Sequence record: AP018399.1
Reading direction: 5' to 3' (one strand)
DNA: 64,000 nucleotides
The translations under genes were made by a program, and so were the position numbers. A model generated the notes under the pieces. The model saw only the letters and a program-made list of their open reading frames with translations, was not told the origin of the DNA and did no database searches. Below are positions 20,301-58,595 of this stretch, in pieces (the stretch's first letter is position 1; every line of letters begins with the position of its first letter).

Positions 20301-23300
20301 GGTCTATTCAGCAAGACCGCTGGCCTGTTCTTCCTAGACGACCAAATCAATTACGGTGTTGGTGGTACAATCAAGGAACATAACGACGGCTTCGATACGC
20401 TGGTGTCGTCAATCTTCGTGAACAACGGTAATCCGACAACGATTATCAACTTCGCCAAGAACGAATACGACAATCAGGTTCGTTACGTCAAGGAACGTTA
20501 CTATCAGGAAGCCGCTGACCTGTTCAGCAACACGGCTCTAAATGTTTCAGACCTACAGGCTGCTATCACAGAGTCCCTAATTAATTCAGTTGAAAACAAC
20601 GGCAAGTTTGACCAGTGGTTCGGCGATACGACCTCGTATGACGCCGCCACGGCCCTTGGCGTTCGTAATTGGATTGCTACGCTACCTCAGTTCGGCCTAC
20701 AGCCTCGTTCGGTACCGTTCAGCGTTCAGGATAGCTCGCTAGGAATGTACGAAGTTCATTGCCATGACGGCCACGTTACCAACGTCGCCTTCAACCCGGC
20801 AATGACTGAACAGCTAGTCCGTCGCATCACAGCCAACAATCCGTCAATCTCTCAGGTGGTTGCATCGGAAGCTGTGCCATTCCCAACCGACTATGAAGGT
20901 AACCCGCTATCGACTGGCATCTACCTAATCCGTACCAACACAACCGCTCGTACCCGTAAGCTATATCGCTTCGGTGGCGCTGCTGTGTGGGAATTGGTGG
21001 ACGTGAACGCCATCTTCGCAAACACCATCCTAGAAATCGAAAACCGTCTATACGCGGTTGCTCCGGAAGTGTTCGATGCTCGCTACGACTTTACTGACGT
21101 TGAAGCTGACCCAGCATTCGAAGACTTGATGGAAGTTCAGTTCCTAGAATACACACGTCTGGAAGGTATCAGCACACCGCTGAACAACAGCGACCGCTTC
21201 CGCCAGAACAACCCATTCACTTGGAATTACTACTACTCACCAATCCAGAACGACCCGCTAACCGGCCTAGTGTCTTATAACACTGCTGGTACATGGCAGG
21301 CTCTATACGAAAACGTGTTCGGTACGGCGTACCCGCACCTAGAACCGTGGGTTCTACAGGGCTATGACAACAAGCCATCATGGTGGGATGCTCAGTACGC
21401 CGACACAACCGGCTCACGTCGCTGGACTCTAACGATGTGGAGCAACGTGTTCGACGGCATCATTCCAGTTGGACAGACTGCACCGAACGGTAATCCGGGT
21501 ACGGGTACTGTCGGCCAGATTACCAACCGCTTCTCATACCTACCGGTCAACACCGGTTCGGTAGAGACTGATGATGGTTACGGTCTGGACGCAATCCTAC
21601 CACCATACTGGAACACCGTGAACACAACCGACGCTCGCATCCGTGGTCTATATGACCCGAATGCTGGTGAGTTGGTGACGACTCCGCAGTTGAACTTCGA
21701 ATTCGGCCAGAACGGTCTAGTTGAGTGGGAATGGCGTCAGTCGCTATCCTACCTATACGACCGCATGGTTGTTGCTTATAAGATTGACCCGATGCGTTTC
21801 ATGCATGAAACGTTTGGTATCGACTACCAGATTGTTTCGTGTCTACAGATTTCGAAGGAATCGGAGAAGGTGTTCTCACATAAGGACACCATCTTCCACG
21901 GTGACTTCATCGACGCGACGAACAACATCTACAAGGCTTACGGTCTAAATCAGTGGTACGTCCACTACCAGCGCTACAGCGGATTTGACGGTATCTCGTC
22001 AGAGTTCCGTTCGCTATGGAAGGATTGGGATACTGACCTAGCGTACCTAGTTGGTGCGTTCCTAGACACCCCAAGCTTCTCAATCGAATCAGATTTCTTC
22101 GACATTACAACGAAGGACTACGAAATCGCTGTTAAGAAGACCAAGGGTATTGCGGACGAATGGCTAACATCGTTGACTGCGACCGTTCTAAACGTTCCAT
22201 CACCGTATGCGAAGCTTCGTGACCAAGGTATCGGCTGGACCGTGGAAATCAGTGACAATTGTCCGGTTGCCCGTCCTATCCAGTACCACCCAACTCAGAA
22301 CTACTCGGTCAACGTCAACACGTCAGGCCAGCCGTTCCGCATCTTCTCGTACCCGCTAAAGGGTATTGAGCTAGTACCGGCTCGTGGCTTCCAGACTGTT
22401 ACGTACAATTCGCCAGTGGCAATGTCGTCTTCGACCGGCCTAAACCCGGCTACGACGTACACATTTGAAGTGGAATTCAACCAGACCACCCTAGCCAACG
22501 CTACGGTGCTAGGTTCGGATGCCCAGACATTTGGTGACCTGTTCAACGTTCTAGCTGACCAGATTGGTACGGCCGGTTCGTTCGGTATCGAAAACGGTAA
22601 CGTTGTTGTGTATAGCGCTTCGAACGCTCCTACATCGTCAGTGGTCATCACAGACAACACCGTGTTCGCAGCGACAAGTGGCTTCGTACAGCTAGAAACC
22701 CCAGCGTCAACTCCTAATAAGTTTGACGGTGCATTCCGCATTGAAGGTAACTTCTACAGTACGTTCGTTGACGCTGGTCAGATTACCATCACATATTCAA
22801 CGCTGTTCAACGGTACCTACACAATCGACCGTGTGTACTACGATGCGACGACCTACCAGACCTTGATTTTCGTCAAGGAAAACGTAACTCTACCATCGAC
22901 AGGTTCGGTGCTAGTGGATGGTCTACTTGAGCCATTGAACGCCAAGACCCTACCACCAGAGTGGACGACTGGTACGGAAGTGTACTTCAACACAACCGGC
23001 TACCTACCAAACAACTTCGATGACGAAGTTCCATACTACGTCATCCGTTTGAGTGACCGTGAGTTCCGCGTGGCGGAAACCAAGGATGCTGCGTTGAAGG
23101 GTGTCTACGTGACACCGACCAGCAACGCTTTGGGTGAAGTATTCATCGGCAAGATTCTAATGACGTTCCAAGCCCTAGGCGGTCAGTTGACTACCTACAA
23201 CTGGCGTCACCATGCCGTGGACTACCGTTACGTCGATAGCTCAAGCAGCAACTTGATGATTTCAGGTATCCAGCAGGTTGTCGATTTCCTAACCGGCTAT

Positions 23301-26300
23301 GATGCTTATACTCAGACCAACGGCTTCCGTTACCGTAACATCAACGGTGAGAACTACGACGCCACAACTGGATTGAACAACAACTGGCAGACTGTAACCG
23401 AGAAGTTCATCAACTGGCTATATGCCCTACGTAACTTCCAGCAGGAAACCATGCTGTCTTATAAGGTCACTGGCAATGCGTCAAACGACTCGCTAGTGAT
23501 GCTAAACGGCACGGTTCCAAACTGGCAAAACGGTACACCGGTCATCTTGTTGGATGATGCTAACTCAACGCTACCAGCAGAGTTCAACAACCCGCTATCG
23601 TCAATCATCCCTTACTACGTAATTCGTGTACAGGGAAGCCTAACTGAGTTCAAGCTAGCCGCTACGGCGTATGATGCTGCGCGTGGTAATGCCATCCCAA
23701 TGACCGACAGCGGCGTTGGTGCATTCCGTGTGCAGGTTTACAAGGCCGTGTCTCAGTACCCAACTTACGAGTTGAACCCATTCAAGCATTACATTTGGGT
23801 TCACCATGAGCAGGGTGTCCTATCGAACGTGTTGGACGATGACTACACTGACCCAACCAGCGCAGCCCGTCTATACGATAACAACGGTATCGAATTGACC
23901 ACGGCCAACGTACTTGTGTTCCGTGAAGACAAGGAAAGTCGTATCTCCCTAACCGAAGATACGATTGCCCAGAACCGTCTAGCCGAAGAGCAGAACAAGC
24001 CGACAATGCATATGTCGGGTATGCACCTGTTCTTCGACGGCTACGAACACATGATTCGTTTCAACGATTACTCGGTTGACAATTCGCTAATCTACGACTC
24101 GTTCCTAGGCTTGAACACTCCACGCTTCTACGTGGAATTCGACCGTCAGCAAGACTTCACCCTACGTCCTAACGTGGGTGGTTTCTACATGCTAGGCGAA
24201 AGCTTGGTTCAGAACTTCGAATCGACAGTCAACGACATGCGTTACTACTACGACAGCGTGAAGGCACCGGAAGGTCGCGTCACAACTGACCTAGTTCGCA
24301 AGTCGCTTGGCTACGATGGTCCGAAGGACTACATGAGCGACCTAAAGATTAACCCGAAGACACAGTTCCAGTTCTGGCAGGCTATGATTCAGAACAAGGG
24401 TACGAACCGTGCGGTCCGTGCTTTCACGAACCAGTCAATCTTCGACTCCGCTGTGGTTGACGAATTCTGGGCTTATAAGCTGGCTGAATTCGGTGACAAC
24501 AAGGAACGTAATTACATTGAAATGAAGCTCTTCCCATCTGACGTGGTGAAGAACGACCTACGTATCGAATTCATTGCTCCTGAGAATGCTGCCATCGACA
24601 GCACCTTCACTGGTGTTGAACTAACGGACATGAACCGTTGGTGGGACCAGCCAGACCAGATTGAAGCAATGCGTCCATACGAAGCGTTCTTCTTCAACAC
24701 GAAGGTGAGCAGCATCATCGACAACATCGCGTCGGTTGTCCAGCGTATTGACAACCGTATCATTTACGTATTCAACGATTTTGTTGATAGCGTGGTGATG
24801 ACGTACTTCGACCCAACTACTCAGACAACCAAGGTGTTGAACGAGGGCGTTGAGTATCGCTTCCTAAACTCAAAGGTAATTGAGTTCCTAATCGAACCGG
24901 GCGTTCTACCGCCGATTACTGCCAGCACGTTGTCTTACGACTACGACGCCCAGAATCCGGCCAAGCTAATCGACAAGGACGCTGGTATTGTCCTAGCTAC
25001 TGTTCCATTCTGGCACCCGGCTATCGGCCAATACTACAACGTACCGTACTACGCTGTTGACCTACGTCGTCCAACCGACCCGGCAATCTACACGACTTCG
25101 CTAGATGGTGGTAACACCGGTAGCGCAACGTGGAAGAAGAACCATGTCGGAACCGTGTGGATGGATAGCAGCATCGAACAGTACCTACCGTACTTCGACA
25201 AGACTGTATACCCAGCTATCAACGACCGTATCAACAAGTGGGGTAAGCTAGCTGATTGGGCTGATATCAACCTGTACCAGTGGACCGAATCTACCGTCCC
25301 ACCGGAATCATATGATGAATTGGCACGTCGCCAGTCATTCGATATGTCCATTCCGGACGAAGACAAGGCAACTGGTGAAACCTACAAGTTGCTATACCAG
25401 AACGTCAACTACGATAGCCCGGACGATGTGGACGCACCGCCATTCTGGATTCAGATTCAGGATACACACTACGACTTCATCGCTGGTCTAAGCTCACAGG
25501 GCATGGATACAACGTTGGCTGGTAAGAAGGCCGAAATCTTCATCAACGGTAAATTCCTAGAAGCAATCACGTTTGAAGACGCTCAGGCTGTACACGCTTA
25601 CTTCGCACAGTTCAACTTCGGTGACTACTGTCACGCGATTGTTCGTGCCCATGTTCCGACCGCTGACGAAATTCAGGCCGGTGCGTATGCGTACTACACA
25701 CCACACAGCATCGAAAAGCGTTTCGATGTGAAGTCGGGTACGACATACAATGTCTACTACTATTGGGTCAAGGACAAGAAGCAGCCGGTATCACCATTGG
25801 CTACCAGCGTTTCTCTATACTCGGCCAAGAAGCAGCTTGTCGATATGTCCGACCCGTACATGATTCTACAGGGTGTACGTACTCCGGACTTCGGTTACGG
25901 CCTAATCTTCGGTCACGTATTCGATGAATTCGCTTACAATCTACCTTACCGCTACACCCAGATGATTGCCAAGGGTCTACATGGCACAGTGAAGGACAAC
26001 AACCGCACGGTTATGCGTTTCACTCGTGACTTCACCCTACGCGACAAGCTGGACAAGGACAGCATCACTCCGAAGAACAAGCATGAAGAGTGGAAGCTAT
26101 TCCGTGAGCAGCAGCTAGAGAAGGTTGACCGCTACCTATGGAACAAGGTGACTGAGGCTCTAATCGGCTTCAAGTTGAACCTAGACGCTACAGCAGCGAC
26201 CGATGAGGCCATCCCATCGTTGAACCGAATCCTATTCGACCGTATCTACCAAGCTGATACTCAGTACGGTATGGGCGACGAACAGGTATTCACCAACAAG

Positions 26301-27311
26301 GACTTGTCACGCCAGACCATCCTAGCGGTCCTAACCGACCCTAACCGTGAGTTTGAATACGTAAACATCGAAGAGTTCCTAGCACGCCATGACTTCCTAA
26401 CACCGGAAGATATCATCGCTGCCATGAATGAAATCTACTTGAACTTCTCAGTGTCAGAAGTCAACACGATTTTCTTCGCGGTCCTACACGATGCTATGAG
26501 CTTGAAGATGGAACATTCTGAAATCTTTAAGACTTCGTGGGTTGCTCTACAGATTTCGCAGAATGTCGTACCGTCGATTCCGATGCCATATGACGAGCTA
26601 CGTCTAGTTCCGGGTCCAGACTGTGCGGCTCCACCGCCGTCACCGTCTCCGACACCAACACCGACAACTACGCCGCAGCTAAGCCCAACACCTACTCCGA
26701 CACCGGACACCTGTGGCAACGGTCCAGATGACCGTATCCTTGAAGATGGTGAGGGACGTATCACGGAAGACGGTCAGTGCCGTATCGTTGAACCGTATGT
26801 GCCAGAGCCTACTCCGACACCTACACCAACACCTACACCGATTCCTCAGTGTGGCGATGGCGACGATGACCGTGTAACAGAAGACGGTGAAGGTCGCATC
26901 ACCGAAGATGGTGAGTGTCGCATTGTGGAACCAGTGGTTAATAATCGCCAGATTGTAGGTACGATGTATGTCTATGACATGGGAGAAGGTGGTCAAAATC
27001 TATGGATAGCAACCACCGAAGGCTATTGTGGTCCAGAGGTTATTACATCACTGGAAGCCGTGGGGGACTATGTAACCGTTGACCCTATCAATGACACATG
27101 GGATTGTCCAGTTACCGACCAAGAGTTCAATGACCCGGTTACATACTCAATCATTCTAGGACCAGAAGTTCCGGAAGGAAATGGTAATTGGGTGGCAAAT
27201 ACGGGCGCATTGAGCGGTTACAGCCCATCGTCTCGTCAATATGTAATGGAATTGATTGTGAATGGAACTGACACAATTTATGTGTGGATGGTAATTTCCG
27301 AGGGTGTATGA
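17370..27311 (+). CDS. Giant baseplate wedge/structural protein (gp7-like position), 3313 aa, C-terminal Pro/Thr tracts
   Basis: Uninterrupted ORF after gp6; GTG start with AGGA RBS and TAAATA at 17335-17340. Confidence 0.7.
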   Translation: MADNNSDYKKTNFNLNDFLPETNKGEFLDSLNKNLFNRYLTKDEFDHIVGIIGDADPNDKVTKPIKERTAFRQDNQLQPVVTEKIGSVNHFMGFEDFMTRIGRTGVDTEKFDQWGNALQFNWVPPIDLDKIVNYRDYYWNSTANPDHAIPQYIVIKSQKNWTAARYVQALKTIVDITGVVPVESFDIPTQKLMLPGNVASSYVAGNHLVLSQADGSLQLVTIASATYNFASTKTEIATVESFTLSSAANLSVYISPVELPVVSISGENLTLNGNFTNLLIEGYVVGVNTNPARLYTVKTSTFDTVTNVTTVTLDGLTVVGFNTLSLYPALALIQAEAEFTADNDTSYPTGGWDNNNIGKIFWYRNTEILNGTQGSTSLGSNILQDLTKNYLVFGIQNTDELQINVGNKNAGKYTINSVTPTTIQTNSGQFFSASTISYRVIRPFSFESISDSTPPLSPSLNQMWYNTATDTLSQWNGSTWNLVYIGISNLAKLVNDRIVTNFSNENDWSDDNEWVHTSQITEFTGMIRAQMPIIEYFPYLDMSETSYSEKVWRYRKDDALSYVDSAVGPKMIELMNFTYSGSEFTFPDVNTMQFDQKFGNFVGELEVGDEVVLSGFTQNDGIYTIATKEYYQPGPGQRYVSRITFTTPIISTTDLPMGANFGPYLTSNGDLFAGLDAKQWEFGGVQDIRASSLAPTKNPMLDVNVATGTSNGFEWILGLNSQTYSSQGNIVVEPTFFFDTSLHDLVLYDDYQEGDIRVYINGKRVYGAFEDLASWVDPDYVGGIKFINGYTVYASDIVRIELGEYAIEDIGLRAILVNTPIGNELYNLTNVRKIEQRKSESNQYPYFALRDIYGERLNLATSIFKYAESESSAINANVLKRIVTNGDGTDYTFVQELKDPATGRLYCYYDYQEVGDELQTIWKHGTYSEQYVPTKVDGAWEMPNQWYYNISHDNYTEVKLTEIFRHFKSIIDLQEQPGLFSKTAGLFFLDDQINYGVGGTIKEHNDGFDTLVSSIFVNNGNPTTIINFAKNEYDNQVRYVKERYYQEAADLFSNTALNVSDLQAAITESLINSVENNGKFDQWFGDTTSYDAATALGVRNWIATLPQFGLQPRSVPFSVQDSSLGMYEVHCHDGHVTNVAFNPAMTEQLVRRITANNPSISQVVASEAVPFPTDYEGNPLSTGIYLIRTNTTARTRKLYRFGGAAVWELVDVNAIFANTILEIENRLYAVAPEVFDARYDFTDVEADPAFEDLMEVQFLEYTRLEGISTPLNNSDRFRQNNPFTWNYYYSPIQNDPLTGLVSYNTAGTWQALYENVFGTAYPHLEPWVLQGYDNKPSWWDAQYADTTGSRRWTLTMWSNVFDGIIPVGQTAPNGNPGTGTVGQITNRFSYLPVNTGSVETDDGYGLDAILPPYWNTVNTTDARIRGLYDPNAGELVTTPQLNFEFGQNGLVEWEWRQSLSYLYDRMVVAYKIDPMRFMHETFGIDYQIVSCLQISKESEKVFSHKDTIFHGDFIDATNNIYKAYGLNQWYVHYQRYSGFDGISSEFRSLWKDWDTDLAYLVGAFLDTPSFSIESDFFDITTKDYEIAVKKTKGIADEWLTSLTATVLNVPSPYAKLRDQGIGWTVEISDNCPVARPIQYHPTQNYSVNVNTSGQPFRIFSYPLKGIELVPARGFQTVTYNSPVAMSSSTGLNPATTYTFEVEFNQTTLANATVLGSDAQTFGDLFNVLADQIGTAGSFGIENGNVVVYSASNAPTSSVVITDNTVFAATSGFVQLETPASTPNKFDGAFRIEGNFYSTFVDAGQITITYSTLFNGTYTIDRVYYDATTYQTLIFVKENVTLPSTGSVLVDGLLEPLNAKTLPPEWTTGTEVYFNTTGYLPNNFDDEVPYYVIRLSDREFRVAETKDAALKGVYVTPTSNALGEVFIGKILMTFQALGGQLTTYNWRHHAVDYRYVDSSSSNLMISGIQQVVDFLTGYDAYTQTNGFRYRNINGENYDATTGLNNNWQTVTEKFINWLYALRNFQQETMLSYKVTGNASNDSLVMLNGTVPNWQNGTPVILLDDANSTLPAEFNNPLSSIIPYYVIRVQGSLTEFKLAATAYDAARGNAIPMTDSGVGAFRVQVYKAVSQYPTYELNPFKHYIWVHHEQGVLSNVLDDDYTDPTSAARLYDNNGIELTTANVLVFREDKESRISLTEDTIAQNRLAEEQNKPTMHMSGMHLFFDGYEHMIRFNDYSVDNSLIYDSFLGLNTPRFYVEFDRQQDFTLRPNVGGFYMLGESLVQNFESTVNDMRYYYDSVKAPEGRVTTDLVRKSLGYDGPKDYMSDLKINPKTQFQFWQAMIQNKGTNRAVRAFTNQSIFDSAVVDEFWAYKLAEFGDNKERNYIEMKLFPSDVVKNDLRIEFIAPENAAIDSTFTGVELTDMNRWWDQPDQIEAMRPYEAFFFNTKVSSIIDNIASVVQRIDNRIIYVFNDFVDSVVMTYFDPTTQTTKVLNEGVEYRFLNSKVIEFLIEPGVLPPITASTLSYDYDAQNPAKLIDKDAGIVLATVPFWHPAIGQYYNVPYYAVDLRRPTDPAIYTTSLDGGNTGSATWKKNHVGTVWMDSSIEQYLPYFDKTVYPAINDRINKWGKLADWADINLYQWTESTVPPESYDELARRQSFDMSIPDEDKATGETYKLLYQNVNYDSPDDVDAPPFWIQIQDTHYDFIAGLSSQGMDTTLAGKKAEIFINGKFLEAITFEDAQAVHAYFAQFNFGDYCHAIVRAHVPTADEIQAGAYAYYTPHSIEKRFDVKSGTTYNVYYYWVKDKKQPVSPLATSVSLYSAKKQLVDMSDPYMILQGVRTPDFGYGLIFGHVFDEFAYNLPYRYTQMIAKGLHGTVKDNNRTVMRFTRDFTLRDKLDKDSITPKNKHEEWKLFREQQLEKVDRYLWNKVTEALIGFKLNLDATAATDEAIPSLNRILFDRIYQADTQYGMGDEQVFTNKDLSRQTILAVLTDPNREFEYVNIEEFLARHDFLTPEDIIAAMNEIYLNFSVSEVNTIFFAVLHDAMSLKMEHSEIFKTSWVALQISQNVVPSIPMPYDELRLVPGPDCAAPPPSPSPTPTPTTTPQLSPTPTPTPDTCGNGPDDRILEDGEGRITEDGQCRIVEPYVPEPTPTPTPTPTPIPQCGDGDDDRVTEDGEGRITEDGECRIVEPVVNNRQIVGTMYVYDMGEGGQNLWIATTEGYCGPEVITSLEAVGDYVTVDPINDTWDCPVTDQEFNDPVTYSIILGPEVPEGNGNWVANTGALSGYSPSSRQYVMELIVNGTDTIYVWMVISEGV
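26712..26933 (+). repeat. Two 28-aa Cys-flanked acidic repeats separated by a PT linker
   Basis: CGNGPDDRILEDGEGRITEDGQCRIVEP (26712-26795) and CGDGDDDRVTEDGEGRITEDGECRIVEP (26850-26933). Confidence 0.9.
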
Positions 27312-33790: not shown

Positions 33791-36088
33791 TTATTCCTCT
33801 ATCAATTTAACCTTGTCTACTGCGCCTAGAATGGCTGGGGCTAGGTATTCATGGTCTAGGTTACTGACCTTGCCTAGCTGGCAGTACCATAGGTACATTG
33901 CCTCCCACTGATTGCTTAGCCATTCTACATTTTCAAAATTGCCACCGAAGAACTTCACTGATGGGTGTAGTTCGCCCATACCACGACCGAACTTGTCACT
34001 CAACCACTTCTCATCGAATGTCGTGTTGACGATATCACGCTTAGCCGATAGGATTAGGTGTGAATTGTTCTGCGACATTGTAATTAGATTGTTCAAGTCC
34101 TTCTGGAAGGTCGCCGGGTCGAACTGAGCTAGGTCAACGAAGACGTGGTGTGAAGCCATGTAGCGGTCTTCGTTCAACGCTTCCTTCGTCCATAGCAGAC
34201 GAATCTTGTCATAGGCACCAACGACCGTCTTCTCTCCGTGGTAGTTCTTGAGGTACACATGACGCGGTTCCACAGTGTAGACATGGAAGCCAGTCAGGTC
34301 ATGCTTAGCCTTGGTGGACTCTTCGGTGATGATGACTACATTGTCCTTACCACGTAGAGCCGCTAGGTTCTTGGCAATCGTTTCGTGCTGGTCCGGAGAC
34401 TGTTCGAACACGAACGCATTGACGCCCATTCCTGCGCGAGCCTTCTTCGAAGTGAATACCGGCGAACGCTTGAACTTACGGGCATCCTTCTTCTTGAAGA
34501 TGAGGTTACCCTTGTAGTAGATAGCGTCCATTTCCGAGTTGTCTAGGATGGAGAATGCATCCGATAGACGGGTCAGAATTGGCTTACCATTCACGTTGAA
34601 CGAAGTGTTCAAGATGACAGCATGACCGGCGTGCTTTTCGAACTCGGTGATTAGGTCATAGATTAGTTCGTTCTGTAGACGGGTCACCGTCTGTAGACGA
34701 GCCGTACCGTCCGTGTGGGTGATGGCCGGGAGCGTTGCCTTGTACTCTTCACGCACGTTGGCGACGAACGTCATATGACGCGACTCAACGTTGTAGTCGT
34801 AGTGGAAATACTTGTTGGCATCCTCTAGACGCACGATAGGAGCGAACGGACGGTACCATTCACGATGCTTGACCTTGTGGTTCAGCACATCCTTCATGTC
34901 GCCTGACGGGTTACAGATGATTGAGCGATTGCCTAGCGCACGCGAACCATGTTCCGAATTACCTTGGATTAGACCGACGATGTTGTTGTCAGCCACGAAC
35001 TCAGCAAGCTCCTGAACCGTCACGTTCTCGTAAACGAAATACTTTGACTGGTCCTGAATGTAGGTTGAGAATTCCTTGTCGTCCAGAATCGGTAGACCGG
35101 AGTAGGTCAGGTCAACCGGGTACTTCGGAGCGATGTGCCATAGCAGGCCACCAGCGGAGATACCACAGTCGCTAGTGTTCGGCGGAACGAAGACGTTACC
35201 ACCCTTGATTTCAAGCAGACGAGCGTTCAGAAGAACGTTCAGACCACAACCACCAGACACGACTAGCGGAATGTGACTGTACTGTTCTAGGAACGGCCCT
35301 GCCAATTCAAGGAAGACTTCCTCAAAGGCTTTCTGGGTCGTAGCAGCGATATCCCAAGCGACCTGACCGCTAAAGCGCGTCTTTTCAAAGTCAAATCCTT
35401 CGAATAGACCGATAGCGGTTAGTAGGTCGGTGACAGCCTTGGTTCGCAGTTCTAGACCACCGATGTAGGAGTCTCCACTGTATACGAATTGCTTGTAGTA
35501 GTGTTTGAAGGCATCCATCCACTCTTCGCGGACGGTACCATACGAGCATAGACCCATCAGCTTACCGGCATACACAAGGTTGCCGATGCTCAAGGAATCT
35601 CGCTTGATATCCTCAAGGTAGTCGGCAAGCAGCATGTATGGGAAGCCAAGGTCATTAGGTAGACGATGGATGAGCTTGATACCTGTGTTTCGGTCAGCTT
35701 CGTAGAAATTGAAGTAGCTACCATCACCGCCACCGTCGAACGAAATGGCTAGAGCCTTGTCGAACGGTGACTGGTAGAAAGCAGCCGCAGCATGTGCAAC
35801 ATGGTGGTCTGCGGCTAGTTGCTTCTTGTACTTGAACTTCGGAACAATCTTGCTCACGTAACCGGTGATGTAAACGTCAACTTCTGTCTTACCAGCCTTG
35901 GCTAGAAGCCAATCGGTAATCTCATCGAACACCACCTGTGGATGTGAACACGGCATGTAATTCACCAAGCCGATGTTCTTTGAGTTCAACCAACGTTCTA
36001 CTTCAACTACAGTGTATTCGCCCTTGTAATACATTGAGATTGCGGCGTTATGGGAACCATACGCCGAAATCACCAGATAATCGTTCAT
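33791..36088 (-). CDS. NodU/CmcH/TobZ-family O-carbamoyltransferase with C-terminal degenerate HtrL-like domain
   Basis: HHVAHAAAAFYQSPF, FDGGGD, GKLMGL, GGCGLN, D.GIS.G, EHGSRALGNRSI, REWYRPFAP, H.DGTARLQTV, LNTSFN..GKPI. Confidence 0.92.
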   Translation of the reverse strand: MNDYLVISAYGSHNAAISMYYKGEYTVVEVERWLNSKNIGLVNYMPCSHPQVVFDEITDWLLAKAGKTEVDVYITGYVSKIVPKFKYKKQLAADHHVAHAAAAFYQSPFDKALAISFDGGGDGSYFNFYEADRNTGIKLIHRLPNDLGFPYMLLADYLEDIKRDSLSIGNLVYAGKLMGLCSYGTVREEWMDAFKHYYKQFVYSGDSYIGGLELRTKAVTDLLTAIGLFEGFDFEKTRFSGQVAWDIAATTQKAFEEVFLELAGPFLEQYSHIPLVVSGGCGLNVLLNARLLEIKGGNVFVPPNTSDCGISAGGLLWHIAPKYPVDLTYSGLPILDDKEFSTYIQDQSKYFVYENVTVQELAEFVADNNIVGLIQGNSEHGSRALGNRSIICNPSGDMKDVLNHKVKHREWYRPFAPIVRLEDANKYFHYDYNVESRHMTFVANVREEYKATLPAITHTDGTARLQTVTRLQNELIYDLITEFEKHAGHAVILNTSFNVNGKPILTRLSDAFSILDNSEMDAIYYKGNLIFKKKDARKFKRSPVFTSKKARAGMGVNAFVFEQSPDQHETIAKNLAALRGKDNVVIITEESTKAKHDLTGFHVYTVEPRHVYLKNYHGEKTVVGAYDKIRLLWTKEALNEDRYMASHHVFVDLAQFDPATFQKDLNNLITMSQNNSHLILSAKRDIVNTTFDEKWLSDKFGRGMGELHPSVKFFGGNFENVEWLSNQWEAMYLWYCQLGKVSNLDHEYLAPAILGAVDKVKLIEE

Positions 36089-36134
36089 TGTGTACCTTTG
36101 AATTGTTTTGACTTAGTATTTACCATTCTGCCAA

Positions 36135-37508
36135 TTAGACTGTAACTGGCTTGGCGATACGATTGCCCCAACCCTTCGACGCACTGTGCGGCCATACGAT
36201 GTACTGCGTAGCAGCCTGATTGCCACGCCAAATTAGGCGGAAGTCAATCCATTCGTTCTGGACGTAAGCCTTGATTTCGTGCGGCTGTGCGTCCTTACGG
36301 AAGATTTCCTTACCCTCTGCGTCAGCCGAACCGACGTACCAGAATGTCATGTCATCCGGTAGCGTTCCGTCTGGGAAGGTTAGTTCGTTGCGGTGGATTA
36401 GAACGCGGATATCATGCGAACCCACGAAGGTTCCCTTCCACTGTTCCTCATTCTCATACACGAAGTCGCCCGGTGGTTCTAGACGGTCGATGGTCTTCTG
36501 CTGAACACCACGGTACTTGAAGCTGATACCGGCGTACTGTTCGTACTCAAGCACGGTGCGTGCAGTACCGAAACCGTACTTGCCGAAATCAATCTGTGAC
36601 GGGTCTTCACCATCCATTCCAAATAGAATGCGGTTACGCTTGTGGCATAGGTCATTACGCTGGACCCAATCTAGCTCCACACGGCCCTTATTCTTCTGTG
36701 CAGTGGTGTGGTCGTCCCAAACCTTGGTACGGCCCTTACGGGTGTACTCGTGCCATGCGATTAGGCGGTGCGGGTGATACAGGTCATAGCCGTGAGTGTA
36801 TGCACGGACAGCGATGGAGATTTCTTCACCGTGGAAGAAGTATTCCGGGTCGTGCTGAACTTCTTCTGCGAAGATGCCATCGGCAAATGCGAAGTGAGCA
36901 GAGAAGAAGCGAGCGCGCATCGGTTCAGTGAGTTCCTTCCAGTTGTCGATAGTTGACGGAATGAAGAACACAGCACCTTCCGGAATGAAGCGGTCAAAGT
37001 CCATCTTCCACGGGTCTTGTACGCGAGCGCCGGGGTCATTCTCTGGGTCGAACGACGGAATGTAAGCGGTTAGAAGCGGCTTCGGTGACTTGGTACGAAG
37101 ACCTTCTAGCATTTCGATAGCGACCTCATCCCAGCCTTCAACGAAGCGGTGGTGAGAGTCAAGCTGCATGGTATACTTTTCCTTGGAGTATAGCTGCTGA
37201 ATCTGGTTACGTGCCCAGCAAGCGCCCTTGGTCTTATGGAAGTGAATGTCGATGACAGACAGCTTGGTGCCTTCTGGGCTTACGACGTTCAGGACAGTCG
37301 CACCACCAACACGCTGGTCTTCGGAAAAGCCTTCAACAACGAAGCCAGCATCTAGGAAAATGTCGGTCGGTTCGTCTTCACCATGCTGCCAGCAGATACC
37401 TACGTGTAGGTTCTCTGGATGCTTGGCGTTCTCAATCATGTTGCGTAGGGTAGGAATCAACTGCGGGTCGCGGTACGCGGCCATCTGAACGTAAATGGTA
37501 TTGGTCAT
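36135..37508 (-). CDS. GT60-like polypeptide/hydroxyproline alpha-GlcNAc transferase (Skp1 GlcNAcT/Gnt1 family)
   Basis: TIYVQMAAYRDPQL, GICWQ, KGACWAR, QLDSHHRF (DxH), KPLLTAY, FSAHFAF, FF.GEEISIAVRAYTHGYDLY.P. Confidence 0.85.
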   Translation of the reverse strand: MTNTIYVQMAAYRDPQLIPTLRNMIENAKHPENLHVGICWQHGEDEPTDIFLDAGFVVEGFSEDQRVGGATVLNVVSPEGTKLSVIDIHFHKTKGACWARNQIQQLYSKEKYTMQLDSHHRFVEGWDEVAIEMLEGLRTKSPKPLLTAYIPSFDPENDPGARVQDPWKMDFDRFIPEGAVFFIPSTIDNWKELTEPMRARFFSAHFAFADGIFAEEVQHDPEYFFHGEEISIAVRAYTHGYDLYHPHRLIAWHEYTRKGRTKVWDDHTTAQKNKGRVELDWVQRNDLCHKRNRILFGMDGEDPSQIDFGKYGFGTARTVLEYEQYAGISFKYRGVQQKTIDRLEPPGDFVYENEEQWKGTFVGSHDIRVLIHRNELTFPDGTLPDDMTFWYVGSADAEGKEIFRKDAQPHEIKAYVQNEWIDFRLIWRGNQAATQYIVWPHSASKGWGNRIAKPVTV

Positions 37509-55943: not shown

Positions 55944-56128
55944 TGGAACGCCATTCTCATTCCCAGATTCACCTTGAACGCGGTTCAATGAACCGTGTTC
56001 ATCACGAACAAGAGGCTAAAAAGAATGGCGTCGATTTTCAGTCTACGCCAGTTCAACGACGACTGGTGAAGAAGTCTCGCAACAAGAAACGTCGTCAATA
56101 CAACAACGAAGAAGTCCCATCAATATGA
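55943..56128 (+). CDS. Small basic hypothetical protein
   Basis: TAATG/ATGA coupling on both sides. Confidence 0.55.
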   Translation: MERHSHSQIHLERGSMNRVHHEQEAKKNGVDFQSTPVQRRLVKKSRNKKRRQYNNEEVPSI

Positions 56129-56568
56129 GTACGCTAGAGAAAATTAAAGCAGACCGCATCGCTGCCATGAAGGCGGGTCAGGGCGTTCGCAAGGACACAC
56201 TGGCTCTAGTTCTGGCAGGCATCAAGCAGGTTGAAGTCGATACCCGCAAGGAATTGACCGAAGCCGACGTTATTGGCCTTCTGACCAAGATGGCGAAGCA
56301 GCGTCAGGAATCCATCAATCAGTACGTCGCAGCCGGTCGTAACGACCTTGCTGACGTTGAGATTGCCGAAAAGGTAATCATTGAGGAATACCTGCCGCAG
56401 CAGCTTTCCGAAGAGGAAGTTCGTCTCAAGGTTGCAGAAGCCATTTCGGCCACTGGTGCAACAACCATGAAGGACATGGGCAAGGTTGTGGCTCTGTTGA
56501 AGCCGGACCTTGTGGGTAAGGCTGACATGGGCTTCGTTTCGAAGCTTGTGAAGGACTCCCTACAGTGA
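56125..56568 (+). CDS. yqeY: GatB/YqeY-domain protein
   Basis: AMKAG...L.LVLA.IKQ.EVD.R, KQRQESI.QY..AGR.DLA..E, EYLPQQLSEEE, KDMGKV...GKAD. Confidence 0.92.
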   Translation: MSTLEKIKADRIAAMKAGQGVRKDTLALVLAGIKQVEVDTRKELTEADVIGLLTKMAKQRQESINQYVAAGRNDLADVEIAEKVIIEEYLPQQLSEEEVRLKVAEAISATGATTMKDMGKVVALLKPDLVGKADMGFVSKLVKDSLQ

Positions 56569-57097: not shown

Positions 57098-57622
57098 ATG
57101 AAGCTAGACACAATTGACGTGGAATTGGTCCGTGGTAAGGACGACCGTGGCACTCCGTATGAAGTGATTGAACTCATTTTGAACGGAGAAAAGCTAAAGA
57201 ACCGCACATTCGACCCGTTCGAATTCGCGGTCCCGCGCATCAAGAACGCCAACTGGTACTTGATGACTTGTAGCTGTGGCATCGCAGGGTGCGGCGGTTA
57301 CCATTACGGCGTCAACATCAAGCGTCGTCTACACACCATCGAATGGCGTGACCACGAGAAGGACAAAGACACGTTCCTAAAGCCGTTCTATTCCTTCAAC
57401 CGTAGTCAGTACGAGGCGGTGCAGGAGAAGTGCATGGACATGATTCATGCTATTGTAAATGAGCGCGAGCAGGCTGGCCGTCCGTTTATCAGCGAAGACC
57501 CGGATGATTACGACTATGACCGCGACTCAATCATCAACTGGTACACGGTTGAGGACTTGAACCGCTCGGTTCAGCGCTACAACGATTTCATTAAGAAGCA
57601 CCGCTCAAGCTGGTCGTGGTGA
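57098..57622 (+). CDS. Hypothetical protein with CSCG..GCG motif
   Basis: 174 aa; LMTCSCGIAGCGG. Confidence 0.7.
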   Translation: MKLDTIDVELVRGKDDRGTPYEVIELILNGEKLKNRTFDPFEFAVPRIKNANWYLMTCSCGIAGCGGYHYGVNIKRRLHTIEWRDHEKDKDTFLKPFYSFNRSQYEAVQEKCMDMIHAIVNEREQAGRPFISEDPDDYDYDRDSIINWYTVEDLNRSVQRYNDFIKKHRSSWSW

Positions 57623-57626
57623 CCCC

Positions 57627-57669
57627 TTGACAAGCCCCACGGACTATGCTCTAATGCATTCCGTGGGGC
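57627..57669 (+). promoter_or_regulatory. sigma70-type promoter overlapped by a 10-bp inverted repeat
   Basis: TTGACA(57627)-N17-TCTAAT(57650); GCCCCACGGA 57634-57643 / TCCGTGGGGC 57660-57669. Confidence 0.65.
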
Positions 57670-57734
57670 CAAGCACTAAATAAGGTTTTGGGCAGTCCCC
57701 ACAATTACTTTAAACTTAACAGAGGATTAATACC

Positions 57735-57743
57735 ATGAAGTAG
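57735..57743 (+). other. AUG-AAG-UAG minigene in frame with the downstream CDS
   Basis: AGAGGA SD at 57721-57726, ATG AAG TAG ACC ATT AAA GCG ATG(57756). Confidence 0.7.
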
Positions 57744-57755
57744 ACCATTAAAGCG

Positions 57756-58595
57756 ATGAAGTTGACGGCACAGACCTCCGGGCAGAACATTCTGCAACAC
57801 GGTCTATCGGTGTTTCGGTACACCAACAAGCTACTGAACAAGGATTTTGAAGGATTCCGCCTACCGCAATGGTGGGGCCAGTATGAAGAGGCTATCTACG
57901 CCAATCTTCATGACTTCAAGACCATCAAGCATTACACGATTTGGCATGACATTGGCAAGCCTTTCTGTCTTGAAATCGACAGCGAGGGTAAGCGCCATTT
58001 CCCTAACCATGCCCAAAAATCCAAAGAAATCTGGGATTCCCTGTTTCCGGACCGGAAGGACGAGTCGCGGCTGATTGCCCACGACATGGCGTTCCATACC
58101 ATGTCCGCAGAGGATATCCTTGGCCTTGGACTGTCTACGAAAGACCTTTGCACCCTGATGCTGGCTTCGCTTGCGGAGCTTCATTCGAATGCAAATATGT
58201 TCGGTGGAATCGAATCGGATTCCTTCAAGATTAAGTTCAAGAAGTGGAGCAAGACGGCTCAACGTATCTGCGACAAGCTGTTCAACCATGCGTATATGTA
58301 CGTGCTGGTGCGAAACGACTTGTCGAAGGCTCAGCAGGCCGTGCAGTCCGCCCACGCTGCCATTGAATCGTCCCGCAACTACCTTGCCTCCGGCGACGAA
58401 CACCCGTCCGTGATTATCTGTTCCGTGAAGAGCGAACAGAAGCTACTCATGTGCGCGGATGAGTTCAAGGAGAAGGGTATCGACTTCCAGATTTTCCGTG
58501 AGCCGGATATCGGCAATCAAGCAACCGCACTGGCCTCCCGTCCGCTCCGTGGACAGGAACGTACAGCCTTTGCCCGATTCCAGCTAATGCAGTAA
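57756..58595 (+). CDS. HD-domain protein fused to a peptidyl-tRNA hydrolase II-like domain
   Basis: H..WHDIGKP...HFPNHA...HD (CCA-enzyme-type HD); MYVLVRNDLS..QQAVQSAHA...FREPDIGNQ.TA. Confidence 0.75.
   Translation: MKLTAQTSGQNILQHGLSVFRYTNKLLNKDFEGFRLPQWWGQYEEAIYANLHDFKTIKHYTIWHDIGKPFCLEIDSEGKRHFPNHAQKSKEIWDSLFPDRKDESRLIAHDMAFHTMSAEDILGLGLSTKDLCTLMLASLAELHSNANMFGGIESDSFKIKFKKWSKTAQRICDKLFNHAYMYVLVRNDLSKAQQAVQSAHAAIESSRNYLASGDEHPSVIICSVKSEQKLLMCADEFKEKGIDFQIFREPDIGNQATALASRPLRGQERTAFARFQLMQ

What the first reader, a model, noticed from the sequence alone, without database searches (positions are those of the whole stretch)
57721..57758. In-frame AUG-AAG-UAG minigene gates the peptidyl-tRNA hydrolase-like gene
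Seen: the strong SD (AGAGGA, 8-nt spacing) serves ATG 57735, not the annotated ATG 57756, which has no clear SD. The frame is ATG AAG TAG ACC ATT AAA GCG ATG, and this is the only SD-led UAG stop I noticed. Established: two-codon minigenes (lambda bar) cause peptidyl-tRNA drop-off, and tRNA-Lys is the species first sequestered when Pth is limiting. Inference: a translational sensor in which UAG readthrough or reinitiation yields HD-Pth when RF1/Pth activity drops or a suppressor tRNA appears, i.e. feedback control by the product's own substrate.
Basis: partly seen in the sequence, partly recalled or inferred. Interest (0 to 1): 0.8.

Follow-up and report, generated by a model that had tools for sequence, protein, structure and literature searches.

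The report
Amber-gated tRNA hydrolase gene in phage
The "minigene" is the true start of a phage gene for a tRNA-end hydrolase whose third codon is a conserved amber stop, apparently read by the phage's own suppressor tRNA; this gives jumbo-phage suppressor tRNAs their first candidate target.

Summary
The window is Xanthomonas jumbo phage XacN1 (record = window + 186000). It is not chance or error. The TAG is invariant in 12 relatives, and in 4 of them the 57756 codon is a Leu codon that cannot start translation. In about 130 further phage contigs, 88 of 96 HD gene starts and 43 of 51 PTH2-like gene starts have M-x(1-11)-TAG directly before the conserved domain, against 3% of control ORFs. In fused PTH2-HD genes the whole PTH2 domain often has no ATG after the TAG. 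XacN1 encodes two tRNA(CUA) genes per terminal repeat, and its authors found no target for them. The same tRNA lies a median 827 nt from the module elsewhere. A scan of the whole XacN1 genome finds this gene as the only such gate. Best reading: programmed amber readthrough makes synthesis of an HD (CCA-enzyme type) plus Pth2-like tRNA 3'-end hydrolase depend on the phage suppressor tRNA. The Lys minigene and drop-off feedback idea is not. Why the gate exists is still inference. No experiment exists.

The parts
57627..57655 (+). Promoter-like element: TTGACA (57627-57632), 17 nt, TCTAAT (57650-57655)
   Evidence: Read. Both hexamers and the spacing are conserved in Xoo-sp13. The consensus scan did not report it because position 2 of the second hexamer is C. 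Its function is inferred.
57635..57668 (+). Inverted repeat (9-bp arms 57635-57643 and 57660-57668) enclosing the -10-like hexamer
   Evidence: Read. Xoo-sp13 has a different 7-bp inverted repeat at the same place. No T-run follows it, so it is not a terminator-like site. Its role is unknown.
57721..57726 (+). Shine-Dalgarno AGAGGA, 8 nt before ATG 57735
   Evidence: Relatives have GGAG, AAGGA or AGGAA at the same distance from their upstream ATG.
57735..57740 (+). True start codon ATG plus AAG (Met-Lys)
   Evidence: The ATG is conserved in all close relatives. The peptide before the TAG varies (MK, MKK, MSFT, MNLA, MNT).
57741..57743 (+). Programmed in-frame amber codon (TAG, followed by A)
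   Evidence: Invariant in the 12-sequence alignment A3. The same gate is found at 88 of 96 HD and 43 of 51 PTH2 gene starts, against 3.0% of control ORFs. The base after the TAG is A 94, G 25, C 11, T 1 at gates, against A 47, C 35, G 40, T 45 at terminal TAGs.
57744..57755 (+). Four codons (Thr-Ile-Lys-Ala) between the TAG and the annotated start, translated as part of the protein
   Evidence: The length is fixed at four codons in the clade. The second residue is always hydrophobic (I, L, F or Y) and is encoded by six different codons. The homologous segment (x-L-I-x-D before the Met) is internal coding sequence in PTH2-HD fusions.
57756..57758 (+). Annotated start ATG: a conserved internal Met of the HD domain and a possible secondary reinitiation site
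   Evidence: No SD precedes it. The codon is CTT, CTA or TTA in 4 of 12 close relatives. The Met is also conserved where the HD domain is internal to a fusion and needs no start.
57735..58595 (+). Full gene: 286 codons including the amber codon, plus the stop (annotated ORF364 is 57756-58595)
57756..58280 (+). HD-type phosphohydrolase domain, related to the HD domain of class II tRNA nucleotidyltransferases
   Evidence: H64-D65, H85, D110 and H114 are invariant. The profile matches the HD region of 3wfp/3wfr at E 0.0016. Foldseek finds the same entries. No Pfam hit. PHROG 14850, function unknown.
58281..58592 (+). Divergent PTH2-like domain (peptidyl- or aminoacyl-tRNA ester hydrolase fold)
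   Evidence: Pfam PF01981 at E 1.8e-5, 25.3 bits against a cut-off of 23. The AF2 model has pLDDT 95. Foldseek matches archaeal Pth2 and human Bit1 with target TM-scores of 0.63-0.75.

Best explanation
ORF364 of phage XacN1 starts at ATG 57735, not at 57756. Its third codon, UAG 57741-57743, is a programmed amber codon. A ribosome loaded by the strong SD makes fMet-Lys and then meets the UAG. If a charged phage tRNA(CUA) is available, it inserts an amino acid, possibly Lys or Gln. XacN1 has two such genes per 66-kb terminal repeat. Translation then continues through Thr-Ile-Lys-Ala-Met into a 286-residue protein made of an HD phosphohydrolase domain of the CCA-adding-enzyme type and a divergent Pth2-like domain. 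If RF1 wins, only a dipeptide is released. Production of this tRNA 3'-end hydrolase is therefore switched on by, and scaled to, the activity of the phage's own amber suppressor. Suppressor tRNA, amber-gated HD and amber-gated PTH2 form a conserved three-part module in many large phages. Shown: the sequence anatomy, conservation of the TAG, absence of any alternative start in many homologues, presence and linkage of the cognate tRNA, and the fold assignments. Inferred: that the tRNA decodes this codon in vivo, which amino acid goes in, and why. My preferred purpose is dose or timing control of an enzyme that acts on tRNA 3' ends. This would be negative feedback if charged suppressor tRNA is among its substrates, because readthrough against RF1 reports the level of charged suppressor tRNA.
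For: (1) The TAG is invariant in 12 close relatives while its flanks vary. In 4 of 12 the codon at 57756 is CTT, CTA or TTA, so the only start is the ATG upstream of the TAG. RAS14's annotators had to start at a GTG 18 codons inside the conserved domain. (2) Among non-redundant gene starts from IMG/VR and metagenome loci, 88 of 96 HD and 43 of 51 PTH2 starts are ATG, 1-11 further codons, TAG, then the domain. Controls show this in 42 of 1390 ORFs (Fisher p 5e-99 and 3e-50). The gate is the only state in 53 HD and 31 PTH2 clusters at 70% identity. (3) In most N-terminally TAG-gated PTH2-HD fusions the first ATG after the TAG lies 108-129 codons downstream. The whole PTH2 domain (Pfam E 1e-6 to 2e-9) therefore has no start of its own. 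(4) All 9 internal in-frame stops in homologues are TAG. CBB and XbC2 carry one in each gene. (5) The cognate tRNA is present. [quoted passage not shown] Xoo-sp13, CM1, RAS14, CBB, XbC2, Arash, ME3 and pT24 each have a tRNA(CUA) too, and the RsoM2USA paper reports one for that phage. In 64 loci that have one, the median distance to the module is 827 nt, and 52 lie within 2 kb. One of the three TGA-gated loci (L068) has a tRNA(UCA) in its flank. Homologues in isolate chromosomes and a plasmid, with no such tRNA nearby, are ungated. (6) The base after gate TAGs is A in 94 of 131 and T in 1 of 131, unlike terminal TAGs (p 3e-15). From my own knowledge, a 3' purine is the classical context for efficient amber suppression (Bossi 1983; Miller and Albertini 1983). 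(7) There is no conserved RNA structure at the gate, which fits a trans-acting tRNA. (8) This is the only such gate in the whole XacN1 genome.
Against: There is no experimental evidence: no proteomics, Ribo-seq or reporter data. XacN1 itself keeps an ATG 12 nt after the TAG, so termination followed by reinitiation could give protein without the suppressor. The XacN1 tRNA(CUA) anticodon stem has only three Watson-Crick pairs, with A27.C43 and C31.A39 mismatches, so its efficiency is unknown. Its charging identity is unresolved; the nearest relative is the phage tRNA-Lys(UUU). About 10% of modules are ungated, some with a tRNA(CUA) next to them. In XacN1 the tRNA genes lie about 207 kb from the gene. 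The loci were collected by homology and are not phylogenetically independent. The purpose of the gate is pure inference.
Confidence: 0.85

Rival explanations
1. Termination-reinitiation. The two-codon ORF only loads ribosomes. They terminate at the UAG and restart at AUG 57756, 12 nt downstream, so the 279-residue annotated protein is made without any suppressor.
For: ATG 57756 exists, is in frame and lacks an SD, and the strong SD sits before the short ORF. A Met at this position is present in 78 of 88 gated HD genes.
Against: In 4 of 12 close relatives this codon is CTT, CTA or TTA. 42 of 43 gated PTH2 genes have no ATG between the TAG and the conserved core, and most PTH2-HD fusions have none for more than 100 codons. 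The same Met is conserved where the HD domain is internal to a fusion, so it is a structural residue. A loading ORF could end in any stop codon, yet TAG is used in 131 of 136 gates while only 10.6% of control ORFs end in TAG. The residues between the TAG and the Met are conserved at the amino-acid level.
Confidence: 0.1
2. One reading: a bar-like AUG-AAG-UAG minigene. Peptidyl-tRNA-Lys drop-off senses limiting Pth or RF1 activity and feeds back on synthesis of a Pth-like enzyme.
For: In XacN1 the short ORF is exactly two codons ending in Lys, and two codons is the commonest length (42 of 88 HD, 16 of 43 PTH2). The product contains a PTH2-like domain. Early stop codons are known to favour drop-off (my own knowledge).
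Against: Length ranges from 2 to 12 codons. The last sense codon is Leu in 34 of 88 and 17 of 43 gates, and Lys in only 11 and 3. Stand-alone HD genes without a PTH2 domain have the same gate. The stop is specifically TAG and co-occurs with tRNA(CUA). XacN1 has a separate canonical, ungated PTH2.
Confidence: 0.03
3. Translational hop (T4 gene 60 type). Peptidyl-tRNA-Lys takes off at AAG 57738 and lands on AAG 57759, skipping 18 nt.
For: A matched AAG...AAG pair flanks the gap in XacN1, Xoo-sp13 and CM1.
Against: L011 (ACT before the TAG) and CBB (CAA before the TAG) have no matching landing codon nearby. The skipped codons are conserved as protein. There is no conserved structure.
Confidence: 0.01
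4. Artefact or decay: a sequencing error, a pseudogene, or genome-wide TAG reassignment (code 15).
For: None specific to this gene. The annotators simply started the gene after the TAG.
Against: The TAG is found in independent assemblies and in more than 100 diverged homologues. The gene is otherwise intact, with invariant catalytic-type residues. The XacN1 paper counts 18 annotated amber stops, and this is the only N-terminal TAG gate of this kind in the genome.
Confidence: 0.01

Closest known systems
Stop-codon recoding in crAss-like, Lak and other gut phages (TAG read as an amino acid through phage tRNA(CUA); bioRxiv 10.1101/2021.08.26.457843; PMC9523058)
   Same: A phage-encoded amber suppressor tRNA, in-frame TAG codons in phage genes, a host that uses the standard code, and the proposal that suppression gates expression of a set of genes.
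   Different: In those phages tens to hundreds of mostly late, structural and lysis genes carry TAGs scattered along their length, and the genome counts as code 15. Here one gene in a 385-kb standard-code genome carries a single TAG at codon 3, and the paper counts 18 annotated amber stops. The gated genes are always the same HD/PTH2 pair and sit next to the tRNA.
Lambda bar minigenes (AUG-AUA-stop; my own knowledge)
   Same: An SD, AUG, one sense codon and a stop, and a thematic link to peptidyl-tRNA hydrolase.
   Different: Bar minigenes stand alone and are not in frame with a downstream gene's conserved N-terminus. Their effect depends on the last sense codon and on Pth limitation. Here length and codon vary, the stop is specifically TAG, and sequence downstream of it is conserved as protein.
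prfB (RF2) autoregulation by an early in-frame UGA (my own knowledge)
   Same: An in-frame stop codon early in a translation-factor gene serves as a sensor. The outcome of the competition at that codon sets how much product is made.
   Different: prfB escapes by a +1 frameshift and its product acts directly on the stop. Here the frame does not change and escape needs a dedicated suppressor tRNA. Whether the product acts on that tRNA is unknown.
Engineered amber-suppressor gene switches, such as amber codons placed in essential phage or polymerase genes (my own knowledge)
   Same: The same logic: a gene is expressed only when an orthogonal suppressor tRNA is present and charged.
   Different: Those are synthetic. 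This one is natural, conserved across deep phage lineages, and tied to one enzyme module.

Membership tests
Suppressor-tRNA-dependent programmed amber readthrough | An in-frame TAG inside sequence conserved as protein on both sides or downstream, with no alternative start | tested here: met
   The TAG is invariant. No start codon follows it in 4 of 12 close relatives. 42 of 43 gated PTH2 genes have no ATG between the TAG and the conserved core.
Suppressor-tRNA-dependent programmed amber readthrough | The cognate tRNA(CUA) is encoded by the same genome | tested here: met
   XacN1 record 36047-36122 and 36130-36205, repeated in the second terminal repeat. ARAGORN also finds a tRNA(CUA) in eight other cultured phages that carry the gate, and the RsoM2USA paper reports one.
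Suppressor-tRNA-dependent programmed amber readthrough | The amber codon is decoded as an amino acid in vivo | not testable with these tools
   This needs N-terminal mass spectrometry, Ribo-seq or reporters.
Genome-wide TAG reassignment (genetic code 15) | Many genes carry in-frame TAG, and TAG is no longer a terminator | tested here: not met
   This is the only N-terminal TAG gate of this kind in the 320-kb unique genome. The paper reports 18 amber-terminated ORFs with nothing recognisable behind them.
Lambda bar-type minigene | A conserved two-codon ORF whose effect depends on the identity of the last sense codon or tRNA | tested here: not met
   Length ranges from 2 to 12 codons. The last residue is Leu, Thr, Lys, Ser or another.
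Lambda bar-type minigene | Toxicity or response when Pth is limiting | not testable with these tools
   This needs pth(ts) genetics.
Termination-reinitiation leader ORF | A start codon close downstream of the leader's stop in all members | tested here: not met
   Present in XacN1 (12 nt away), but absent in CM1, RAS14, L018, L020 and L094 and in nearly all PTH2 genes.
T4 gene 60-type bypass | Matched take-off and landing codons | tested here: not met
   Matched in XacN1, but not in L011 or CBB.
Pyrrolysine decoding | A tRNA-Pyl of unusual architecture plus pyl genes | tested here: not met
   ARAGORN's 'Pyl' label only reflects the CUA anticodon. The tRNAs fit the general tRNA model end to end at 64 bits, form a normal cloverleaf and are closest to the phage tRNA-Lys(UUU). 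The pyl genes were not searched for.
PTH2 (PF01981) | A sequence match above Pfam's gathering score | tested here: met
   25.3 bits against a cut-off of 23, E 1.8e-5, residues 181-263. The match is marginal; the canonical XacN1 PTH2, ORF295, scores 116 bits.
PTH2 (PF01981) | The Pth2 alpha/beta fold | tested here: met
   Foldseek matches 2zv3, 3erj, 1xty and 1q7s at E 1e-5 to 2e-4, with target TM-scores of 0.63-0.75, using a model of pLDDT 95.
PTH2 (PF01981) | Catalytic residues and peptidyl-tRNA hydrolase activity | tested here: inconclusive
   The invariant D251 and T257-A258 motif resembles the Pth2 active-site region, but I did not map it residue by residue. Activity is not testable here.
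HD domain of class II tRNA nucleotidyltransferases | The H...HD...H...D metal-binding motif and similarity to the CCA-enzyme HD region | tested here: met
   H15, H64-D65, H85, D110 and H114 are conserved. The profile aligns to residues 260-342 of 3wfp at E 0.0016. Foldseek gives probability 1.0 but low TM-scores. There is no Pfam HD hit, so the assignment is moderate.

The most novel reading that the evidence does not exclude
Suppressor tRNA, amber-gated HD and amber-gated PTH2 form a self-contained homeostatic circuit. The suppressor tRNA serves as a dedicated reporter of the charging and 3'-end state of tRNA, because readthrough against RF1 scales with charged tRNA(CUA). The enzymes it gates act on tRNA 3' ends: deacylation, peptidyl hydrolysis or phosphate removal. 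The circuit therefore regulates itself. This would explain why many standard-code jumbo phages carry an otherwise purposeless amber suppressor, and it would be a natural equivalent of synthetic amber-gated switches.
Probability: 0.25. Interest if true: 0.9.

Novelty: new variant of a known kind. Interest (0 to 1): 0.85.

Why it matters
Suppressor tRNAs are annotated in many jumbo phages that use the standard code, and their role is an acknowledged puzzle. The XacN1 authors read through all 18 amber stops and found no target. The RsoM2USA and phiKp24 papers also leave the question open. This result supplies a specific, conserved and testable target. An uncharacterised pair of tRNA 3'-end enzymes (PHROG 14850, function unknown) carries an amber codon at about codon 3-5 and sits beside the tRNA. 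It also shows a blind spot in annotation. These genes are routinely truncated, split or missed: RAS14 starts 18 codons too late, CBB and XbC2 are split into three CDS, the RsoM2USA PTH2 is unannotated, and the Arash tRNA(CUA) is labelled Phe. Finally, it is a possible intermediate between standard-code and fully recoded phages, with a single regulatory amber codon serviced by a phage tRNA.

Tried and rejected
(1) No tRNA lies in the 64-kb window itself. The suppressors sit in the terminal repeat, about 207 kb away. (2) The hop hypothesis (AAG to AAG) looked attractive in four phages but fails in L011 and CBB. (3) RNA structure at the gate: z-score -0.62, and RNAalifold finds no pairs. Rfam finds nothing in 57500-57900. 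(4) The consensus scan finds no promoter or terminator in 57400-58000. By eye I did find a conserved TTGACA-17-TCTAAT. (5) Other amber-gated genes: none convincing in XacN1. Among neighbours of the module in other loci, the rate of TAG plus short ORF falls to background once unrecognised PTH2-HD fusions are removed. (6) Amino acid inserted: nearest-neighbour typing of 63 tRNA(CUA) sequences is scattered over Trp, Arg, Met and Lys. One internal TAG aligns with a conserved Lys column. This is not decisive. (7) Literature: six searches and four papers read gave no report of amber-gated HD/PTH2 genes. The library lacks most subscription journals. (8) A close-relative protein scan of IMG/VR found only one locus. 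The alignment-based scans were needed. The domains were searched apart.
Full report
WHAT THE WINDOW IS. The window matches Xanthomonas citri jumbo phage XacN1 at 100% identity (AP018399.1, 384,670 bp; record coordinate = window + 186000). The gene in question is ORF364, 'hypothetical protein', annotated from ATG 57756 to 58595.

OBSERVATION. It is exactly as described: AGAGGA at 57721-57726, 8 nt, ATG 57735, AAG, TAG 57741-57743, ACC ATT AAA GCG, then ATG 57756 in frame. ATG 57756 has no SD word of 4 or more bases. Stops just upstream leave ATG 57735 as the only possible start of the short ORF. In the whole unique genome, read piecewise (L005, L172-L176 and the window), this arrangement is unique. 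An SD-led ATG, at most 8 codons, a TAG and then a dominant ORF occurs once among 468 ORFs.

THE TAG IS CONSERVED AND MUST BE PASSED.
- All 12 sequences in the DNA alignment keep the TAG while the flanks vary. They are XacN1, two independent Logan assemblies, Xoo-sp13, Stenotrophomonas phage CM1 (RAS14 is identical to it in the four-sequence alignment) and seven metagenomic contigs.
- The peptide before the TAG varies: MK, MKK, MSFT, MNLA, MNT.
- The four codons after it keep their number, and the second is always hydrophobic, encoded by six different codons.
- In 4 of the 12 the codon aligned with ATG 57756 is CTT, CTA or TTA. RAS14's annotation therefore starts at a GTG 18 codons inside the conserved domain.

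I then collected about 160 loci with an alignment of 26 homologues. I located the HD part (XacN1 residues 1-175) and the PTH2-like part (176-279) by tblastn and read upstream in frame.
- Of 96 non-redundant HD gene starts with a stop within 30 codons, 88 are ATG, 1-11 further codons, TAG, then the domain. Three use TGA and one uses TAA.
- Of 51 PTH2 gene starts, 43 are TAG-gated, and 42 of those 43 have no ATG before the conserved Y-x-Y-x-x-x-R-x-D-L core.
- Control ORFs from the same loci show the pattern in 42 of 1390 cases, or 3.0%. Fisher p is 5e-99 and 3e-50.
- 18 of the 39 HD domains with no nearby stop lie behind a TAG gate further upstream: 17 are the C-terminal half of a PTH2-HD fusion gated at its own N-terminus. 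In most of these fusions the first ATG after the TAG lies 108-129 codons downstream, and the stretch in between is a Pfam-recognisable PTH2 domain.
- The Met equivalent to 57756, and the x-L-I-x-D segment before it, are conserved in these fusions, where no initiation is needed. The Met is therefore a structural residue, not evidence for reinitiation.
- All nine internal in-frame stops found in homologues are TAG.
- At 70% identity the gate is the only state in 53 HD and 31 PTH2 clusters, so it spans deep divergence.
- Named cultured phages with the gate: XacN1, Xoo-sp13, CM1, RAS14, CBB, XbC2 (PTH2 gene M-A-Q/H-TAG, plus an internal TAG in the HD gene), RsoM2USA, Arash, ME3 (L085) and pT24 (L064).

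THE COGNATE tRNA.
- The XacN1 paper reports two tRNA(CUA) genes per terminal repeat. It states that reading through the 18 annotated amber stops revealed no target (PMC5852040). An amber codon two codons after an unannotated start was outside that test.
- ARAGORN and Rfam confirm the two genes at record 36047-36122 and 36130-36205.
- They share the D, anticodon and T arms. Their acceptor stems differ but are each fully paired, and the discriminator is A in one and G in the other. They are closest to the phage's tRNA-Lys(UUU).
- ARAGORN finds a tRNA(CUA) in every gated cultured phage for which I scanned a tRNA region; for RsoM2USA the genome paper reports one.
- Among 84 loci of at least 15 kb, 39 have one within 10 kb. 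Where one is present, the median distance to the module is 827 nt, and 52 of 64 lie within 2 kb.
- Contigs binned with Obscuribacterales and Melainabacteria carry a compact cassette: an HD gene starting M-T-TAG (M-S-TAG in one of them), with a tRNA(CUA) 100-200 nt downstream. HD homologues in isolate replicons (Sphingomonas, Psychromonas, a Pseudomonas fluorescens megaplasmid) have neither gate nor tRNA.
- One of the three TGA-gated loci (L068) has a tRNA(UCA) in its flank.

CONTEXT OF THE CODON. The base after gate TAGs is A 94, G 25, C 11, T 1. After terminal TAGs in the same loci it is A 47, C 35, G 40, T 45 (p 3e-15). From my own knowledge, a 3' purine favours amber suppression in E. coli. 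There is no conserved RNA structure and no Rfam family.

WHAT THE PROTEIN IS. AlphaFold2 on the alignment gives pLDDT 95.
- The C-terminal domain has the Pth2 fold: 2zv3, 3erj, 1xty and 1q7s, with target TM-scores of 0.63-0.75. It matches Pfam PTH2 marginally above threshold.
- The N-terminal helical domain carries an invariant H...HD...H...D...H set. It aligns with the HD region of class II tRNA nucleotidyltransferase structures, 3wfp and 3wfr, at E 0.0016.
- Both halves therefore point to tRNA 3' ends.
- XacN1 also has a canonical PTH2, ORF295 (Pfam E 1e-33), that is not gated. The gated domain is thus a divergent paralogue, probably with another specificity.
- PHROGs lists the family as function unknown.

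MECHANISM. Shown: the anatomy, the conservation, the absence of alternative starts, the linkage to the tRNA and the folds. Inferred: ribosomes start at 57735, and tRNA(CUA) competes with RF1 at codon 3. Success gives the 286-residue HD-PTH2 protein; failure gives a dipeptide. Expression is therefore conditional on, and graded by, charged suppressor tRNA.

Placing the stop at codon 3-5 makes failures cheap. From my own knowledge of minigene work, release factors act poorly on very short peptidyl-tRNAs, so an early stop may also favour the tRNA.

The purpose is speculative. One option is dose limitation or negative feedback for an enzyme that could deacylate tRNAs. Another is a translational delay after early transcription, since a conserved TTGACA-17-TCTAAT lies at 57627-57655. 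A third is coupling to ribosome rescue, because tmRNA genes often lie nearby.

RIVALS. Reinitiation at 57756 is possible as a side route in XacN1 but cannot explain the family. The bar-like Lys minigene model fails on conservation. The hop fails in L011 and CBB. Error, pseudogene and code 15 are excluded.

KNOWN OR NEW. Suppressor-dependent expression of phage genes with in-frame stops is known from recoded gut phages. A single, N-terminal gate specific to one module in standard-code jumbo phages, linked to the tRNA, was not found in the searchable literature. That library lacks most subscription journals. I rate it a new variant of a known kind.

CAVEATS. Everything is comparative. The loci are not independent samples. 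The amino acid inserted is unknown. My ORF-based count of TAG-terminated ORFs in XacN1 (45 of 425) is higher than the paper's 18, and I could not resolve the difference.

Noticed in passing
L005:37177-37621 (XacN1 record, terminal repeat; outside the window): A permuted (two-piece) tmRNA gene with tag ANANTFDYALAA lies 1 kb downstream of the two suppressor tRNA genes. The XacN1 genome paper does not mention it. tmRNA genes also lie within a few kb of the HD/PTH2 module in about 13 distinct metagenomic loci, for example L110, L115, L117 and L127.
   Followed up: partly
L005:36047-36122 and 36130-36205: The two tRNA(CUA) genes have identical D, anticodon and T arms. Their acceptor stems differ at six of seven pairs, each fully paired, and the discriminator is A in one and G in the other. 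This suggests two charging identities. The anticodon stem has A27.C43 and C31.A39 mismatches.
   Followed up: partly
window 57627-57668: TTGACA, 17 nt, TCTAAT is conserved with Xoo-sp13. The -10-like hexamer sits in the loop of a 9-bp inverted repeat. Xoo-sp13 has a different inverted repeat at the same place, so this may be an operator or a structured 5' end.
   Followed up: no
L195:2678-3890 (Salmonella phage Arash): The tRNA annotated as Phe has anticodon CUA by ARAGORN. The CDS annotated 'peptidyl-tRNA hydrolase' is a 50-residue fragment, because the real gene starts M-L-TAG.
   Followed up: yes
L194:2490-3984 (Ralstonia phage RsoM2USA): The PTH2-like gene is not annotated at all, and the HD gene is annotated from the Met after its TAG. 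Both are TAG-gated (M-L-TAG and M-K-S-TAG).
   Followed up: yes
L009:4981-5881 and L010 (Pectobacterium phage CBB, Xanthomonas phage XbC2): The domain order is swapped and the module is split into two coupled genes. It is annotated as three small CDS because of a TAG at codon 4 of the PTH2 gene and an internal TAG (L009:5453) in the HD gene. A tRNA(CUA) lies 3-4 kb downstream.
   Followed up: yes
L174:24042-24458 (-), XacN1 ORF295: XacN1 also encodes a canonical PTH2 (Pfam E 1e-33) with an ordinary start. The phage therefore has one ungated standard Pth2 and one amber-gated divergent one.
   Followed up: partly
window 56125-56568 (+), ORF360: A YqeY-like protein (Pfam E 1e-46; annotated 'glutamyl-tRNA amidotransferase') lies four genes upstream and is syntenic in Xoo-sp13 and the Logan contigs. 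RAS14 and one Logan contig have an aminoacyl-tRNA synthetase just downstream. The neighbourhood is rich in translation genes.
   Followed up: no
L017, L068, L077 (TGA) and L095 (TAA): A few homologues carry TGA or TAA at the gate position instead of TAG. L068 has a tRNA(UCA) in its flank. L039/L130 and L151 also have a tRNA(UCA) near the module.
   Followed up: partly
L182-L186, L188, L189 (contigs binned as Obscuribacterales or Melainabacteria): A minimal two-gene cassette: an HD gene starting M-T-TAG (M-S-TAG or M-L-TAG in two of them) with a tRNA(CUA) 100-200 nt downstream and no PTH2 hit. It recurs in seven MAG contigs. These are probably phage or prophage DNA.
   Followed up: no
XacN1 whole genome (L005, L172-L176, window): My ORF-based count gives 45 of 425 dominant ORFs ending in TAG. 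The genome paper states 18 amber stops among 592 ORFs. The discrepancy is unexplained.
   Followed up: no
window 17370-27311 (+): A single 3313-residue ORF, by far the longest in the window. I did not examine it.
   Followed up: no
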